A DNA stretch of 64,000 nt from Octopus sinensis. Lineage: Eukaryota. The stretch is from contig NC_043014.1 of the NCBI RefSeq assembly GCF_006345805.1, positions 36,456,001 through 36,520,000 of the forward strand. The letters are read 5' to 3'. Shown one piece after another: positions 29 to 23,921 of this stretch (position 1 is the stretch's first letter; the number at the start of each line of letters is the position of its first letter). The notes beneath the pieces are model-generated. The model was given only the letters and a program-made list of their open reading frames with translations. It was not told the origin of the DNA and ran no database searches. Position numbers and translations under genes: made by a program.

Positions 29-51
29 ATGACATTGTCTTACGTTGACAG
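29..51 (+). CDS. Ig-GPI gene copy 1, coding exon 1 (MTLSYVD-R; signal peptide n-region)
   Basis: ATG at 29, phase-2 donor AG|GTATAG at 52. The same exon in copy 2 joins in frame to the hydrophobic exon 2. Confidence 0.55.
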
Positions 52-2154
52 GTATAGTGTAGCGGAACTAAAATGGTATTGGAAAATGTGTAAAGTTTTT
101 GAAAATTTTGGTCAATCAATCCCAATGGAATCAAATTACAGATCAGCTAACTTTATAGTTGTAGTTGGCTTGAATGTAGGATTATATACAGCTTAGCATA
201 AGCCAAACGTTAATTTTAATGTTGATAAATTCTCAAATCGTCCCTGTTCAATTACAATCTTTATTATTGATAGTTTCGCATATAATATTTAGCTGGTCTG
301 CGTCGAATGCGGGTCATTATAAGGTAGCACTCGCTAGAGTGAGATATGTAGAAAAATTAGTTATATTCAAAGTAGTGAATCAGTTAACAGCCCTTCCTGC
401 AGGAACACTTGAATACTACAATTGGTAGACAAAGGTGTAGGTCTGGAGACGGAATAAATGAGGATATAATTAACAATAAACCTGATTGGTGAAACACGTA
501 TGTATATATATAGGACATGTGCCCTACTATGAGAACCTAACTATTCGAACCCGCTACCTTGACTATAAGTAATAGCAAGAGAGGGGAATGATGGAAATTG
601 AGGGATGTTAAGAAATTATAAGGAGCGAAAATGCTTAAGTAAACCGAACTCAACTTGCAGCCGTATGAAAACATTAGGTAGTTGGTTGTAAAGTGTAAGC
701 AGCAAAACACTGCACACAGTAGGGAAAAACAAGAAATAGTAAAATCGGTAAAGGATTACGTCTCGAGAAAAATGATATATCCAGTATTTACCCTTGATGT
801 ATCCCTCTGATTGCTTCCGCTTTCTTCGCTGCATTAGATAAACTCTTCAGTAAATCTATTAGATATCATAAAACATTTTATAGACATCGTTAATGTGTCT
901 TACGCAACTACCCTATTATAAAATATACCTCCAATGGAATAATAAAATCTTACTCAACAGGTCTTTTCTAATATTTATAATTGCAATGTAAATGACTCTA
1001 CAGGCTGCACATAGACCAGGAGTCGATGTATTGGTAGATAATGTGCGAGAGAATGGAAAGTATTTCATATGTGACACCAACACAACTACTCAAGATATAT
1101 CCGACGATCGACTCAGTAGTGGTAATAGTAATAATGTTAACAATTACAGTAATAGTCCTTTCTACAATGGTTTCAAGACCAAATCTTGTGGAAGGGGATA
1201 GTCGATTCTATCTAAGCCAGTTCTAAACTGGTTATTATCTTATCGACCCCGAAATGGTGAAAGACAAATTCGAGCTCGATGATATTTGAACTCAGAAGGT
1301 AAAAGACAAGAAATGTTGATAAACATTTGTTCCGTTGTTGTAACGATTGTGCCAACTCTTAGCATCGGCATTTATCGTGTTAATGATGGTAGGAACAGCA
1401 TAATATTAGTTCTAGTTATTATAATAAATGAAATTAAAATCATGAAGATAGTAGTAAAAATAGTGAAAATACTTGTGATGCTAATAGTAATGCCAGTTAT
1501 GACTAGAATAATGCAATAATTTGCAACTTTAGAATTACGATAAATATACAACACTGGTACTTCACCATCTCTCTCCTGCTCTCACTCTCTCTCTCTCTAT
1601 CTCTCTCTCTCTTTCTCTGTCTTGCAGTTTTGCTGTTTCCTACTCCTCTCTTTCTTCCTTCTTTCTCTCTCTCTCTCTCTCTTCTCTCCCTCGCTCTCTC
1701 TTGCCCTTTGCTGTTTTCCTTCTCTCTCTTTTTTCCTTTGTTCGTGTCCTCTGGCTTGATAGCCATATATCTCATCTACAGCAGCACACCTATTTCTGCT
1801 CTCATTCTTGGTCTCTTTCTCTCACTGGGTAGCCATGGAGCTTCTCTATAGCAATATCCTATTTCTACTACTCCTATTTCTTTGCAAGACAACTACCTTT
1901 AATCATCAGATATCGGGCCACCTCCTCCAATGGTCCATATATATATATATATGTGTGTGTGGTGTGTGGTGTGTGTGTGTACCGTTTGCGATCAGATATC
2001 GGGCCACCTCCTCCAATGGTTCCATATATATTATATATGTGTGTGTGTGTGTGTGTGTGTGTGTTGTTCATTCTTCTTTCCTGAGCGTCCAATAATACTA
2101 TATTTGTTCCACATCCTCGCGTTGTTGTGTTTTTGTGCTTTTTTGTTTGGATTA

Positions 2155-2263
2155 ACTTTATATATATATATATATTATATACAAATAATATAATAATATA
2201 TATATATATATATATATATATATATATATATATATATATATATATATATATATATATATATAT
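2155..2263. repeat. (TA)n microsatellite, one of many (e.g. 7725-7801, 8065-8205, 13490-13650, 35300-35410, 39440-39570, 56545-56680)
   Basis: Direct reading; these tracts generate most spurious YI/HT/VC-repeat ORFs. Confidence 0.97.
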
Positions 2264-3680
2264 TAAATAGAGGAATTTATCTCTTAATGTTTACATATGC
2301 GAATTATTCTGTAGCCATGATAAAACTCCGAGAAAAAAAAAACAGGGTTCAGAGTAACAATACAGAGAAAAAGGCATATGGGAGTATACAAAGTGTGTAA
2401 ACCACGTCTCTATTACGCACATACAATTATGCACGCGTACACAAACCCCCTATATGCGACATACCCGCACACGTCCATACACGCCAACACACACCATTAA
2501 GGAAAAAACTATACTCTATGAAACATTTAGAGAAAATTAGAGACTGTATGCGCATAAGATGGAAGATATTATCCATATAAATCAAATGGGGTGATTATAA
2601 TCGCCCCATTTGATTTATATGGATAATAACCTTACTAAATCTGGTACCTGTATATATATATTATATAATATAATTTATAATGATAAAATTAGGAGTATGG
2701 CTCCAAACTTATACAGGGAAAATTAGATTTTAGGATTAAATCAAATTTCACAGTATAAATATATAAATATGAATTAGAGATAAAACCACTATTAGGCAAC
2801 TCAAACAGTTTGAGTGCCTAATAGTGGTTTTATCTCTAATTCATATATATCTATATATGTAAATGTAAAAAAATACAAAACTGGGACAAGAACGTGAAAA
2901 CATTTAGAAGACGATTATGATAACGATAGTCACTGTGGTTGAACAATTAGCTTAACGTCCACTCCACTTCAATAGCGAAATTCTTCCCAAGCCTTCGAAC
3001 ATTCTTTCAATAACGTACCCTTCCCCACTCCACTTGTTCCCTACCTACTATCCTTAACCCTCTCTTCCTACTATCTATCTTTGACGTCAATTCTTCTAAC
3101 GATTTTTTAAAAATCACTCATTATCGTTTTGTTTACAATGTAGGCATTCATCGAAATTTTTGTTCGTCTTTTTGTCGAGAGAGGCTCCTTTCTATCCTGA
3201 TGAGAAGATTGCATAATGCACCTTTATTCATTTGGAATGAAACCATGATTGTCTTCAAACATATGTCGAGAGTAAAGGAATTTGCTAACATCTTCGTTCG
3301 ACTCCATTCTTCTTATTTATTCATTACAACACAAAAATTTCTGCACATGAACCCGGAGTTTCTACCGTTGAACAGGTCGCTTCAACCGTGTTTTGACGTG
3401 AATTTGCTACCCTGGTTTCGGTCAACGAATTTTTCCATGCTTACGATAAACATAGGATAATTCATTCACCTATTTAAATATATATATATATATATATATA
3501 AATATATATAAATTGTAGCCAACCTACCGACTACTTTAATATGCTTGTATATCCAACCAAATACAGTGCTGATCAGCAGGTAAATGACCTCTACGAAGCA
3601 ACAACTGTGAGTGGCAGAAATTTCAAAATTATGTTTGCAGGACCGAACGGTCAGTGGGTAAGGTGATGCTGGTTGACGGA

Positions 3681-4411
3681 TCAGGCTGGAGATAACTCTC
3701 GTTGTTGGCAAAGCAGTTGCCAGATTCAGCATCATTGACGTATGTAACATAATTCCTACAGATAAACCTGCTCGCTTACCGAATATATTTATGGTAGGAG
3801 GAATTGAGAACTTTCAAAGGATCCAGTGGAGTGGAACGCCAATCAACTAAGCAGAGTTATGAGATATTCTGTTGAAGAAACAGTGAGCTTGATGTTTAAT
3901 AAAAGATGTTTTATAAACACATTCTACCAGTATACGAAGTTTAAGTGTTTTGTTGCGTGGAACTTATTTAAAAAAAAACTGCCGTTCAAACCGAAAAGAT
4001 CCCGTACGTTTCATTTCCAATCCCTTCTGCTTCACCAGTAAGGTCAGGCTGGAGATAACTCTCGTTGTTGGCAAAGCAGTTGCCAGATTCAGCATCATTG
4101 ACGTATGTAACAATAATTCCTACAGATAAACTGCTCGCTTACCGAATATATTTATGGTAGGAGGAATTGAGAACTTTCAAAGGACCAGTGGAGTGGAACG
4201 CCAATCAACTAAGCAGAGTTATGAGATATTCTGTTGAAGAAAGAAAACAGTGAGCTTGATGTTTAATAAAAGATGTTTTATAAACACATTCTACCAGTAT
4301 ACGAAGTTTAAAAGTGTTTTGTTGCGTGGAAATTATTTTAAAAAAACTGCCGTTCAAACCGAAAAGTTCCCGTACCGTTTCATTTCCAATCCCTTCTGCT
4401 TCACCAGTAAG
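3681..4411. repeat. About 365-bp local tandem duplication private to copy 1
   Basis: tcaggctggagataactctcg...caccagtaag at 3681 and 4044; single-copy in copies 2/3. Confidence 0.9.
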
Positions 4412-22564: not shown

Positions 22565-22597
22565 GTACTGAGCAGAAAGCAATCAGAGACAATGCAG
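22565..22597 (+). CDS. Ig-GPI gene copy 1, exon 5: 33-nt stalk microexon (GTEQKAIRDNA)
   Basis: atttttatttctag acceptor, CAG|GTATCT donor, symmetric phase 1, in frame between Ig2 and the terminal exon. Confidence 0.62.
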
Positions 22598-22989
22598 GTA
22601 TCTTTAATCTTCTAACTTTTGCTTCTTTCAGTTACTGGATGGTGGCCATGCTGGGCTATTTTCTAATAGTCTTTGTCATACTTATTCCCGAACTGATACG
22701 TTGTGGGCACGTAAACAAACCAACACTGGTTTTCCAGTGATGGTGGGGAACAAACACTAATGTACACATCTATACATACATACATGCACACGCTACACAC
22801 ACTCACACACACATACATACACACAGATACCGCGCACACACAAATATATACACGACATTCTTGGGTCAAGCATAGACCTATGCAGGGTACCTGACACCTA
22901 GTGTGACATCAGGCGCTCACACCTCTGTCAGCAGGGTATTGGTCTTAGTGGACGTTGCACCGAGATCATCTACTCACAATTGGTGGTGA

Positions 22990-23590
22990 GTAAAAGTGAC
23001 AACATCCTCTAGGAATCTCTGAGTGTCAAGGAAGGCCAACTGCCCAGTCGTTTTCGAAGAAGTTTTGCGCCGGGTTCCATTGATAATTTACAAAAATCCC
23101 TTGCCTGGCAGTGCTACAGAATAACATTGCCGATTCGTAATAAAGTGTACCGGCATGATATTCCCCTCAGCTGCTCTTGCCCTTGATGCACATTGCATGA
23201 TGAAGATTTTCTACACGTATTAGTATAGTGCTTGAGCATCGTTGAATTCTGGAGTTACGTCTACCAGCTGCAATCACTTCTCGGACGGATCTGGTTATAG
23301 GTCGAATCCAAAGTGAAGATTGCTTCCTTGCATTCCTTTTATCTTGAAGGGTAGGCAGATTTCCTCCATTAGGTGCTTTTGGTGAAAGATGATGCGATTA
23401 ATGAGAAAGAGACCAAACCTTCATTGACTTTTCATGTTTAAAAGGAAAGTGAGCGTGGAGAGCAAGGTCCTTTCTCCCAGTAAAACTTACACTGTGGATG
23501 AATATAGCAAGAATGGCTCGAGTGAATTGTCGTAACCTAAGCGTGCCCATGTAGTTACAGCAGTACGGAGGTGAGAGAAACACAACAGTA
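22990..23590 (+). mobile_element. Tx1/L1-like ORF2 3' fragment, decayed
   Basis: LPIRNKVYRH...CP-C relic of the C-terminal zinc-finger region at about 23125-23200. Confidence 0.5.
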
Positions 23591-23841
23591 TTCCTGGTAA
23601 CAGGGTGACTCAGGATTACTTGGTTACTGTGAGGTTACTTGGTTACCCTTGGCGGCATTTTGTCCGGCTTTCTGAGTTAAAATGCCACCGAAGTTGACTT
23701 TACTTTTCATTCTTTCAGAGTCAATGAAATAGGCACCAATTGAATACTGGAGTTGATGTAATCGATGTCCACCTTCACCAAAGTTTTTGGTCTTGTACCA
23801 AAATTAAAATGAAATGTGCTTTTTTTTACTTTCTATTACAG

Positions 23842-23921
23842 ATAAATTATCTGATGCAAATATTATTACTAAGATTTTGAAATTTGCAGCAACACTGCTT
23901 GTTATTGGCCATTTTCATTAA
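23842..23921 (+). CDS. Ig-GPI gene copy 1, exon 6: terminal exon with GPI-anchor-like signal (DKLSDANIITKILKFAATLLVIGHFH*)
   Basis: Strong acceptor ttttttttactttctattacag, phase-1 entry, small-residue cluster S-D-A-N, hydrophobic C-terminal stretch, TAA at 23919-23921. No canonical AATAAA seen nearby. Confidence 0.65.

What the first reader, a model, noticed from the sequence alone, without database searches (positions are those of the whole stretch)
29..23921. Hidden six-exon gene for a two-Ig-domain, GPI-anchored surface protein, amplified in tandem
Seen in sequence: exons 29-51, 5737-5788, 14104-14436, 15952-16260, 22565-22597 and 23842-23921 have GT-AG sites with compatible phases (2,1,1,1,1). 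With one base restored in exon 2 they total 831 nt (276 aa plus stop): signal peptide, Ig1, Ig2, stalk, hydrophobic tail. Exons 1-4 recur intact in copy 2 and exons 2-3 in copy 3. Established: symmetric phase-1 exons are typical of IgSF domains, and two-Ig GPI proteins include Drosophila Dprs and vertebrate CD48. Inference: this is a lineage-specific recognition-molecule cluster. I cannot assign it to a named family, and the ORF track does not reveal it.
Basis: partly seen in the sequence, partly recalled or inferred. Interest (0 to 1): 0.88.

Follow-up and report, generated by a model that had tools for sequence, protein, structure and literature searches.

The report
Octopus-only fast-evolving two-Ig surface genes

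Summary
The core observation holds. Exons 2-6 are bounded by AG/GT in compatible phases. They recur in the same order and spacing in about 9 neighbouring genes. They match the Octopus bimaculoides RefSeq protein LOC106880713: signal peptide, Ig1, Ig2, short stalk, hydrophobic tail. AlphaFold2 gives two confident beta-sandwiches, and Foldseek matches V-C proteins (TCR and antibody light chains, butyrophilin, SIRP-alpha).

Corrections:
- Exon 1 (29-51) has no support. The start codon lies in exon 2, so there are five coding exons.
- Copy 1 alone among 15 paralogs lacks one T just after that ATG (ATG TGT TAG), so as assembled it is not intact.
- Copy 3's Ig1 exon is frameshifted.
- Copies 2 and 3 are near-identical across a 100-N gap and may be an assembly duplicate.
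- Copy 2's last exons fall in that gap.

New findings:
- The genome is Octopus sinensis.
- The family is confined to octopods (Octopus, Argonauta): 48 hits among 1.84 billion representative proteins.
- The Ig1 exon is under diversifying selection (omega 3.3, p = 3e-4; exon 3x more diverged than its intron). Ig2 is not.
- Paralogs are mosaic through gene conversion.

A GPI anchor is plausible but untested, and function is inferred only. This is a new member of a known kind: a diversifying IgSF receptor array.

The parts
5737..5788 (+). The family ATG is at 5744-5746 but is followed by a unique 1-nt deletion (ATG TGT TAG). The in-frame ATGs at 5755-5760 would give only MMLLMSSYTSA.
14104..14436 (+). 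Copy 1, Ig1 exon. It is V-set-like, 333 nt, phase 1-1, and is the diversifying domain.
15952..16260 (+). Copy 1, Ig2 exon. It is C-like, 309 nt, phase 1-1, and is conserved among paralogs.
22565..22597 (+). Copy 1, stalk exon (GTEQKAIRDNA, 33 nt, phase 1-1).
23842..23921 (+). Copy 1, terminal exon: DKLSDANIITKILKFAATLLVIGHFH plus TAA. The hydrophobic tail ends at the C-terminus, which is GPI-signal-like.
37556..37608 (+). Copy 2, signal-peptide exon, intact (ATG at 37563; MLIVMMLLMSSYTSA; 53 nt).
46158..46490 (+). Copy 2, Ig1 exon, intact. It is 78% amino-acid identical to copy 1.
48012..48317 (+). Copy 2, Ig2 exon, intact (306 nt). It is 94% amino-acid identical to copy 1.
50690..50789 (.). 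A 100-N scaffold gap. Homology of unit 2 to unit 1 stops here, so copy 2's stalk and tail exons are missing from the assembly.
54673..54725 (+). Copy 3, signal-peptide exon, intact and identical in coding to copy 2.
63187..63523 (+). Copy 3, Ig1 exon, 337 nt. It is frameshifted by +3, +2 and -1 indels relative to copy 2 and is otherwise identical. It is either a pseudogene or an assembly error.
29..51 (+). It is not supported as an exon (chance-level ATG...GT string). Its duplicate lies at 31890-31912.
27122..30405 (-). A degraded LINE (endonuclease plus reverse transcriptase ORF fragments) in the spacer between copy 1 and copy 2. It is not part of the gene.
40724..43127 (.). A GC-rich interspersed repeat inserted in intron 2 of copy 2, and again at 57852-60244 in copy 3. 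It is absent from copy 1.

Best explanation
The window carries two or three tandem members of an octopod-specific immunoglobulin-superfamily gene family in Octopus sinensis.

Each gene has five coding exons:
- a short signal peptide;
- a membrane-distal V-set-like Ig domain;
- a membrane-proximal C-like Ig domain;
- an 11-residue stalk;
- a hydrophobic tail that ends at the C-terminus and has the form of a GPI-attachment signal.

About ten close paralogs lie head-to-head in two arrays, four on the minus strand and five or six on the plus strand, within a larger cluster of roughly 25 more distant members on the same chromosome.

The array evolves by duplication, gene conversion between paralogs and pseudogenisation. 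Positive selection keeps changing the surface loops of the distal domain, while the proximal domain, the introns and synonymous sites stay similar.

Shown: the gene structure, the Ig folds, the taxonomic restriction, the diversifying selection on Ig1 and the defects in copies 1 and 3.

Inferred: the protein sits on the outer cell surface, probably lipid-anchored and without its own signalling tail. It uses the variable distal domain to bind a variable ligand, either non-self or pathogen molecules or conspecific cells. It signals, if at all, through a partner such as the family's transmembrane member. In this it resembles vertebrate CEACAM, KIR or NITR-type multigene families.
For: GENE MODEL
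- AG/GT sites and compatible phases.
- Splice sites are conserved in all paralogs examined.
- The same exon order and spacing recurs in about 9 genes.
- The architecture is identical to O. bimaculoides XP_014786273.1, and isoform X6 of LOC106880715 skips the symmetric Ig2 exon.
- Each O. sinensis Ig1 has a 99% identical counterpart in O. vulgaris models, in the same order.

FOLD
- AF2 pLDDT 87.5 and pTM 0.74 for the homologue, with two beta-sandwiches.
- Foldseek against PDB matches TCR chains, antibody light chains, BTN3A1 and SIRP-alpha at E 1e-7 to 1e-5.
- The window's Ig1 alone has pLDDT 91.6 and matches VHH and antibody V domains and the sodium-channel beta-4 V-type Ig domain at TM about 0.6.
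- Cys(B), D-A-x-Y-x-C and further cysteines are conserved across 27 Ig1 sequences.

SELECTION
- Ig1 mean dN is 0.122 against dS 0.033 and intron divergence 0.035-0.067. Pairwise differences total 606 non-synonymous and 48 synonymous, and several pairs have 18-31 non-synonymous and 0 synonymous.
- Maximum-likelihood omega is 3.3, with a likelihood-ratio test against omega = 1 giving p = 3e-4. Ig2 has omega 1.7, p = 0.12.
- Nucleotide diversity peaks inside the exon (0.095-0.126) against 0.03-0.04 in intron 3.
- Variable sites cluster in the BC, C'-C'', DE and FG regions.

MOSAICISM
- About half of informative site pairs fail the four-gamete test.

TAXONOMIC RESTRICTION
- Only 48 hits among 1.84e9 representative proteins, and all strong ones are Octopus or Argonauta.

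TAIL
- The 19-residue hydropathy is 1.41, against 3.71 for the transmembrane paralog. The hydrophobic run ends 4 residues from the C-terminus. Small residues (S-D-A-N) lie 8 residues upstream.
- Sister subfamilies carry textbook GPI-like ends such as ...SAASGMLYTKWILVVNLILLFLVAAISR.
Against: - No transcript, expression or protein data for this subfamily was available. A search for protein fragments spanning the exon 3-4 junction found none.
- No O. sinensis protein for these genes is in the databases searched.
- Copies 2 and 3 differ by more indel events than substitutions (64 against 30) next to a scaffold gap, so one of them may be an assembly artefact.
- Pfam Ig models do not reach threshold, so Ig membership rests on predicted fold and motifs.
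- The full-length fold was predicted for a 58%-identical homologue, because the spliced window protein was not accepted by the tool.
- Gene conversion violates the single-tree assumption of the likelihood-ratio test.
- The GPI anchor and signal peptide were not tested with dedicated predictors or biochemistry.
- The ligand and the tissue are unknown.
Confidence: 0.6

Rival explanations
1. Neuronal wiring or cell-adhesion labels, as the reader's Dpr analogy implies. In this reading a combinatorial code of small Ig proteins specifies synaptic partners or self-avoidance in the large octopus nervous system.
For: - The proteins are small two-Ig proteins that are likely lipid-anchored.
- Octopus genomes are known for lineage-specific expansions of neuronal adhesion genes such as protocadherins (own knowledge; PMC6339937 was listed).
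Against: - Wiring codes are typically under purifying selection with conserved orthologues. Here Ig1 has omega 3.3 and the closest O. bimaculoides protein is only 58% identical.
- The profile search found no arthropod or other Dpr/DIP-like sequence relatives.
- There are no expression data.
Confidence: 0.12
2. Reproductive or gamete-recognition proteins, whose rapid evolution is driven by sexual conflict or species recognition.
For: - dN/dS well above 1, concentrated in one exposed domain, and strong lineage restriction are also typical of fertilisation proteins (own knowledge).
- One family member gave a faint Izumo-Ig Pfam hit at E 0.05.
Against: - Orthologues in O. sinensis and O. vulgaris are 99% identical in Ig1, so little divergence is seen between these sister species.
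- A ten-gene array with gene conversion is less typical of gamete proteins.
- The Izumo hit is at chance level.
- There are no expression data.
Confidence: 0.13
3. A largely dead array. In this reading the exons are relics of recently duplicated pseudogenes and the high dN/dS reflects relaxed constraint.
For: - Copy 1 has lost its start frame.
- Copy 3 and gene m2 have disrupted Ig1 exons.
- No O. sinensis protein models or transcript-derived fragments were found.
Against: - Relaxed constraint gives omega near 1, not 3.3, which is significantly above 1.
- Six of the seven Ig1 exons analysed and all Ig2 exons are open. Cysteines, core motifs and splice sites are conserved.
- Each paralog is 99% conserved in O. 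vulgaris.
- O. bimaculoides homologues have multi-isoform RefSeq models.
Confidence: 0.07
4. Part of the 'tandem amplification' in this window is an assembly artefact. In this reading copy 3 is the same locus as copy 2, either the other haplotype or an unpolished contig, joined across the 100-N gap.
For: - Substitution divergence is 0.5-1.5%, but there are 64 indel events against 30 substitutions. Between copies 1 and 2 there are 37 indel events against 245 substitutions.
- The exon 4 sequences are identical, and the flanking introns are 99-99.9% identical (L005 against L006).
- Both copies share the same repeat insertion.
- The duplication boundary coincides with the gap.
- The unplaced scaffold C9019 similarly mirrors gene m4.
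Against: - A very recent real duplication would look similar.
- The rest of the array, with 5-6% divergence between units and orthologues in O. vulgaris, is certainly real.
Confidence: 0.4

Closest known systems
O. bimaculoides LOC106880713 / LOC106880715 (XP_014786273.1 and related; UniProt 'Ig-like domain-containing protein') and the unnamed O. vulgaris models CAI97377xx
   Same: They belong to the same family with the same five-part architecture. Identity is 58% (O. bimaculoides) and up to 99% per domain (O. vulgaris). Signal peptide, motifs and tail are the same.
   Different: These are database predictions without any described function. The O. vulgaris models are chimeras of neighbouring genes and repeat-derived exons. 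The window's genes themselves have no protein entry in the databases searched.
Butyrophilin/B7-type and antigen-receptor-type V-C ectodomains (BTN3A1, TCR chains, Ig light chains, SIRP-alpha)
   Same: They are the best structural matches to the two-domain model. For BTN3A1 (4f80) the target-normalised TM-score is 0.57 at E 7e-6, and TCR and Fab chains match at E 1e-7 to 1e-6. The layout is a distal V-like domain plus a proximal C-like domain.
   Different: Sequence identity is only 10-16% and there is no significant sequence-level hit. There is no B30.2 domain, no transmembrane segment and no somatic rearrangement. Ig1 lacks the strand-C tryptophan and carries extra cysteines. Whether Ig2 is C1-, C2- or I-set was not resolved.
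CEACAM, KIR/LILR and fish NITR multigene IgSF families (functional analogy, from own knowledge)
   Same: These are tandem arrays with birth-and-death evolution, pseudogenes and gene conversion. Positive selection is focused on the membrane-distal Ig domain. Members are a mix of GPI-anchored or tail-less and transmembrane forms.
   Different: No homology was detected. The host is an invertebrate. The ligands, expressing cells and signalling partners are unknown, and no ITIM or ITAM was seen in the transmembrane paralog's tail.
CD48 / CD2-SLAM family and Drosophila Dprs
   Same: They are two-Ig extracellular proteins, and some are lipid-anchored.
   Different: There are no sequence hits to either. 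Neither appears among the top 50 structural matches. Dprs are conserved wiring molecules rather than rapidly diversifying arrays.

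Membership tests
Immunoglobulin superfamily (V-set-like Ig1 and C-like Ig2) | Two-sheet Greek-key beta-sandwich fold | tested here: met
   The AF2 models have pLDDT 87.5 (homologue, both domains) and 91.6 (window Ig1). In the Foldseek searches the top-ranked matches listed were all Ig-type chains: V-C proteins for the two-domain model and V domains for Ig1.
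Immunoglobulin superfamily (V-set-like Ig1 and C-like Ig2) | Strand-B and strand-F cysteines and the D-x-G/A-x-Y-x-C motif | tested here: met
   In Ig1, C24, D91 and Y95 are invariant and C97 is nearly invariant across 27 sequences. Ig2 has FRC...VSC.
Immunoglobulin superfamily (V-set-like Ig1 and C-like Ig2) | Conserved tryptophan in strand C | tested here: not met
   Ig1 has FFL/FxL with an invariant Leu instead of Trp. Ig2 does carry it, as FLW/FVW.
Immunoglobulin superfamily (V-set-like Ig1 and C-like Ig2) | Match to curated Ig sequence models (Pfam V-set, ig, I-set, C1-set, C2-set) above the gathering score | tested here: not met
   The window protein gave no Ig hit at E up to 10. Among 44 family sequences there were only sub-threshold hits: V-set at E 0.042 and ig at E 7e-4 in 4 members.
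GPI-anchored surface proteins | Cleavable N-terminal signal peptide | tested here: inconclusive
   Copies 2 and 3 and 12 other paralogs encode M-L-(I/L)-V-M-M-L-L-M-S-S-Y-T-S-A followed by F. This is a hydrophobic core with small residues at -3 and -1, and AF2 predicts a helix for residues 2-11. No SignalP was available. Copy 1's start is frameshifted.
GPI-anchored surface proteins | C-terminal hydrophobic segment with no cytoplasmic residues, preceded by a short spacer and small omega-site residues | tested here: inconclusive
   The tail is ...KLSDAN-IITKILK-FAATLLVIGHFH. Its 15-residue hydropathy is 2.05 and its 19-residue hydropathy is 1.41, which is too weak for a transmembrane helix. It ends at the C-terminus, and S-D-A is a possible omega triplet. 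No PredGPI or NetGPI was available.
GPI-anchored surface proteins | Release by PI-PLC or a lipid anchor shown biochemically | not testable with these tools
   This needs expression in cells and enzyme treatment.
Drosophila Dpr family | Sequence homology to Dprs and binding to DIP partners | tested here: not met
   A profile search of 1.84e9 representative proteins returned only octopod proteins plus three weak, generic mollusc Ig-domain hits (two looked up: Haliotis, Tegillarca). Binding to DIPs is not testable here.
CD2/SLAM family (CD48) | Sequence or fold match to CD2-family V-C2 ectodomains | tested here: not met
   There is no CD2, CD48 or SLAM chain among the PDB sequence hits or among the top 50 Foldseek matches.
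Butyrophilin/B7 family | IgV-IgC ectodomain plus a transmembrane segment (and B30.2 in butyrophilins) | tested here: not met
   The ectodomain fold matches BTN3A1. However, there is no transmembrane segment, cytoplasmic domain or B30.2, and no sequence-level similarity.

The most novel reading that the evidence does not exclude
An octopod-invented, germline-diversified V-C receptor array that serves non-self or self recognition. This would be either an immune-type receptor or decoy family on haemocytes or epithelia, or a polymorphic surface tag used for individual or self recognition, for example the still-unidentified skin cue that stops octopus suckers from grasping the animal's own arms. 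It would be a cephalopod counterpart of vertebrate KIR/CEACAM/NITR families or cnidarian and tunicate allorecognition loci, arrived at independently.
Probability: 0.3. Interest if true: 0.8.

Novelty: new member of a known kind. Interest (0 to 1): 0.6.

Why it matters
Cephalopods have no described diversified immune-type or allorecognition receptor family. Their known lineage-specific expansions are mainly protocadherins, zinc fingers and GPCR or chemotactile receptors.

This family has four features that make it a concrete candidate for how octopuses recognise variable ligands:
- It is restricted to octopods.
- It is arranged in tandem arrays.
- It homogenises by gene conversion.
- It keeps a three-fold excess of amino-acid change in the outward-facing V-like domain.

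It can be tested with existing RNA-seq and simple cell-surface assays. The work also shows that current annotations miss or mis-merge these genes: they are absent from the O. sinensis proteins found here and chimeric in O. vulgaris. Repertoire and expression studies would therefore overlook them.

Tried and rejected
- Pfam scan of the spliced protein gave no Ig family. A PDB sequence search gave nothing significant with either a single sequence or a profile.
I therefore folded the O. bimaculoides homologue with window exons in the alignment, and the window's Ig1 exon alone.
- A search for short database proteins spanning the exon 3-4 junction, as a proxy for transcript evidence, found none.
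- Six literature searches used gene symbols, accessions and topic words. No paper on this family was found.
- Exon 1 was rejected as a coding exon.
- Relaxed constraint was rejected as the cause of the high dN/dS.
- The sample behind the distant transmembrane-type homologue P0047 (SRR24189489) could not be identified.

Full report
WHERE THE WINDOW IS. The window is G000:C18:36456001-36520000 of a 2.72-Gb, 13,516-contig assembly. Two database proteins sit on contigs of exactly the lengths of C12040 and C18. They are XP_036355923.1 (33,120 bp) and XP_036366492.1 (55,351,117 bp), and both are named Octopus sinensis. The genome is therefore O. sinensis.

CHECKING THE OBSERVATION. I read all six proposed exons and joined them. 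Exons 2-6 each have an AG acceptor after a pyrimidine tract and a GT donor. In one continuous frame they give INNVLVMMLLMSSYTSA / 110-residue Ig1 / 102-residue Ig2 / TEQKAIRDNA / KLSDANIITKILKFAATLLVIGHFH-stop.

Exon 1 fails the check.
- It is 23 nt long and joins exon 2 out of frame, reading ...ATG TGT TAG.
- The 5.7 kb upstream of exon 2 holds 166 ATG-initiated open strings ending at a GT in the same phase.
- Its recurrence at 31890-31912 is uninformative, because the surrounding 2 kb is 94% identical between units.

THE START CODON. An alignment of the signal-peptide exon from 15 paralogs shows that 14 read AATG-TTG-(T/A/C)TA-GTT-ATG-ATG, that is M-L-(L/I)-V-M-M-L-L-M... Window copy 1 alone lacks one T, which gives ATG TGT TAG.
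That lesion is either a real frameshift or an assembly error.
- As assembled, copy 1 could start only at the in-frame ATGs at 5755-5760. This would leave an 11-residue leader, which is probably too short (inference).
- The intact form of the gene has five coding exons: 46 + 333 + 309 or 306 + 33 + 80 nt.

COPIES IN THE WINDOW. Self-BLAST gave two relationships:
- Unit 1 (1-18551) matches unit 2 (31862-50688) at 93-95% identity.
- Unit 2 from 33691 matches unit 3 (50790-64000) at 98% identity.
- The two relationships meet at a 100-N gap (50690-50789).

Copy 2 has intact exons 2-4. Its stalk and tail exons are absent because the sequence runs into the gap, and exons 5 and 6 occur only once in the window. 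Copy 3's Ig1 exon is 337 nt, with +3, +2 and -1 indels relative to copy 2, and it is frameshifted.

Copies 2 and 3 differ by 0.5-1.5% substitutions but have twice as many indel events as substitutions in the first 6 kb (64 against 30). Copies 1 and 2 show 37 indel events against 245 substitutions. Both copies 2 and 3 carry the same repeat insertion. I therefore give about 0.4 probability that copy 3 is an assembly or haplotype duplicate of copy 2.

THE ARRAY OUTSIDE THE WINDOW. Searching the genome with Ig1+Ig2 gave 59 or more exon matches. The signal-peptide exon gave 16 matches and the tail exon 13. Combined, they define nine to ten close paralogs:
- Four lie on the minus strand at 36.28-36.38 Mb.
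- Five or six lie on the plus strand at 36.41-36.55 Mb.
- Each has the spacing exon 2, 8.4 kb, exon 3, 1.85 kb, exon 4, about 8 kb, tail exon.

This regularity is strong independent support for the exon 2-6 model. More distant members (29-47% identity) fill C18:36.05-36.88 Mb. Others lie at C18:6.4-6.55 Mb and on C3, C1 and small scaffolds, giving at least about 38 Ig1-type exons in total. Scaffold C9019 mirrors gene m4 almost exactly and is probably a haplotig. Splice sites are conserved in all paralogs inspected.

HOMOLOGUES. A word-indexed protein search found six proteins.
- O. bimaculoides XP_014786273.1 (LOC106880713 isoform X1, 263 aa) has exactly the predicted architecture at 58% identity.
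- LOC106880715 isoform X6 skips the symmetric Ig2 exon.
- The O. vulgaris models are chimeras of adjacent genes, but they contain 99%-identical counterparts of individual O. sinensis Ig1 domains in the same order. The paralogs are therefore real and predate the sinensis-vulgaris split.

A profile search of 1.84 billion representative proteins gave only 48 hits. Those I looked up are O. vulgaris, O. sinensis, O. bimaculoides and Argonauta hians, plus weak generic Ig hits in Haliotis and Tegillarca. All are named 'uncharacterized', 'hypothetical' or 'Ig-like domain-containing'. No paper mentioning the gene symbols or accessions was found.

THE FOLD. Pfam does not recognise the protein. Across 44 family sequences there are only sub-threshold V-set and ig hits. 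PDB sequence searches are not significant, although the weak hits are all IgSF.

I therefore folded XP_014786273.1 using an alignment of 44 family sequences that included the window's exons. The model had mean pLDDT 87.5 and pTM 0.74, with two beta-sandwiches and a low-confidence C-terminal helix.

Foldseek against the PDB gave 1,063 matches at E up to 1e-3. The top matches were TCR chains, antibody light chains, butyrophilins BTN2A1 and BTN3A1, and SIRP-alpha, which are all V-C proteins. The window's own Ig1 exon, folded with 27 Ig1 sequences, gave pLDDT 91.6 and pTM 0.85. It matched VHH and antibody V domains and the sodium-channel beta-4 V-type Ig domain at TM about 0.6.

Ig1 keeps the strand-B and strand-F cysteines and the D-A-x-Y-x-C motif. 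It replaces the strand-C tryptophan with Leu/Phe and has three extra conserved cysteines. Ig2 keeps the tryptophan.

SELECTION. For seven intact close paralogs I compared the Ig1 exon with its flanking introns, and did the same for Ig2.
- Ig1: mean dN 0.122 and dS 0.033, against intron divergence 0.035-0.067. Several pairs have 18-31 non-synonymous and 0 synonymous differences.
- Ig2: mean dN 0.054 and dS 0.035.
- Codon-model maximum likelihood (GY+F3X4) gives omega 3.3 for Ig1, with 2dlnL = 13.2 against omega = 1 (p = 3e-4). For Ig2 it gives omega 1.7, p = 0.12.
- A sliding window shows a diversity peak (0.095-0.126) confined to the Ig1 exon, against 0.03-0.04 in the downstream intron.
- Variable positions cluster in the predicted A'-B, B-C, C'-C'', D-E (VPKVPGDKK, up to five variants) and F-G regions.
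- About half of informative site pairs, in exon and intron alike, fail the four-gamete test. The paralogs therefore exchange sequence, which is a caveat for tree-based tests. It also explains the homogenised introns. The exon keeps four times the density of informative differences.

MEMBRANE ANCHOR. The tail's best 19-residue hydropathy is 1.41, against 3.71 for the family's genuine transmembrane member. The hydrophobic run ends four residues from the C-terminus, and small residues (S-D-A-N) lie about eight residues upstream.

Sister subfamilies end in textbook GPI-like signals such as ...SAASGMLYTKWILVVNLILLFLVAAISR. An intronless paralog on C1 (LOC115221679, 303 aa) is conserved in Argonauta and has a real transmembrane helix and cytoplasmic tail. 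A GPI anchor is therefore a reasonable inference but is not shown.

INTERPRETATION. The evidence fits an octopod-specific IgSF surface-protein family that evolves by birth and death and by gene conversion, with positive selection on the distal V-like domain. This is the signature of molecules that bind variable ligands.

I commit to that mechanism at about 0.6. A specifically immune or allorecognition role gets about 0.3. The rivals are neuronal wiring (0.12), gamete recognition (0.13) and a dead array (0.07). Relaxed constraint alone cannot give an omega significantly above 1 together with conserved cysteines, splice sites and orthologues.

No expression evidence was available, and a search for junction-spanning protein fragments found none.

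NOVELTY. The sequences of relatives are already in databases as uncharacterised predictions. The kind of system, a tandem IgSF receptor family with a diversifying distal domain, is well known in vertebrates. New here are the recognition of the family, its restriction to octopods, the selection pattern, and the correction of the gene model and of the copy-specific defects.

Noticed in passing
L027 = G000:C1:167305957-167309535 (ORF 1282-2331): An intronless family member (LOC115221679, 303 aa from its Met) has a signal peptide, both Ig domains, a true transmembrane helix and a 34-residue cytoplasmic tail. It is conserved in Argonauta hians. It could be the ancestral form, a retrogene, or a signalling partner of the tail-less members.
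   Followed up: partly
window 40724-43127 and 57852-60244: A GC-rich 2.4-kb insert with long ORFs on both strands sits in intron 2 of copies 2 and 3 and is absent from copy 1. It is an interspersed repeat with at least 40 copies on many chromosomes at 91-97% identity. It supplies the spurious N-terminus of the O. vulgaris model P0003.
   Followed up: partly
window 50690-50789 and flanks 33691-64000: A 100-N gap sits exactly at the junction of two 98-99% identical units, which differ mostly by small indels. This looks like a possible false duplication or haplotig insertion in the assembly.
   Followed up: partly
L004 vs L010 (G000:C18:36286397-36289708 vs 36315600-36318911): Genes m1 and m2 have flanking introns 99.4-99.6% identical, but their Ig2 exons differ at 4.2% of sites (9 non-synonymous, 3 synonymous). 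This is an exon-confined patch of divergence, presumably from a short gene-conversion tract or from selection.
   Followed up: no
L030 (G000:C3:157887500-157890811) vs L031 (G000:C18:36227890-36228180): An Ig1 exon on chromosome C3 translates identically to one in the C18 cluster, and a signal-peptide exon match lies next to it on C3. This is either an inter-chromosomal segmental duplication or a misplaced contig.
   Followed up: no
window 19271-19843 (-), 25305-26843 (+), 27122-30405 (-): Degraded non-LTR retrotransposon pieces lie in intron 4 and in the spacer after copy 1. They carry RVT_1 and endonuclease domains, and there are further RT-like ORFs without a Pfam hit.
   Followed up: partly
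window 4947-5676, 36825-37373, 53951-54475 and many other stretches: Long microsatellite arrays (a TATC-type repeat read as 'YLSIYLSI', plus CA/TG runs) lie immediately upstream of each signal-peptide exon and within introns. They generate most of the long spurious ORFs in the window.
   Followed up: no
P0008 and P0023 (relatives of the cluster member at G000:C18:36876904): One distant subfamily carries a mucin-like Thr/Pro-rich stalk (TTTAKPTTTEK repeats) after Ig2. The 1,202-residue O. vulgaris model is a fusion of about five tandem genes.
   Followed up: no
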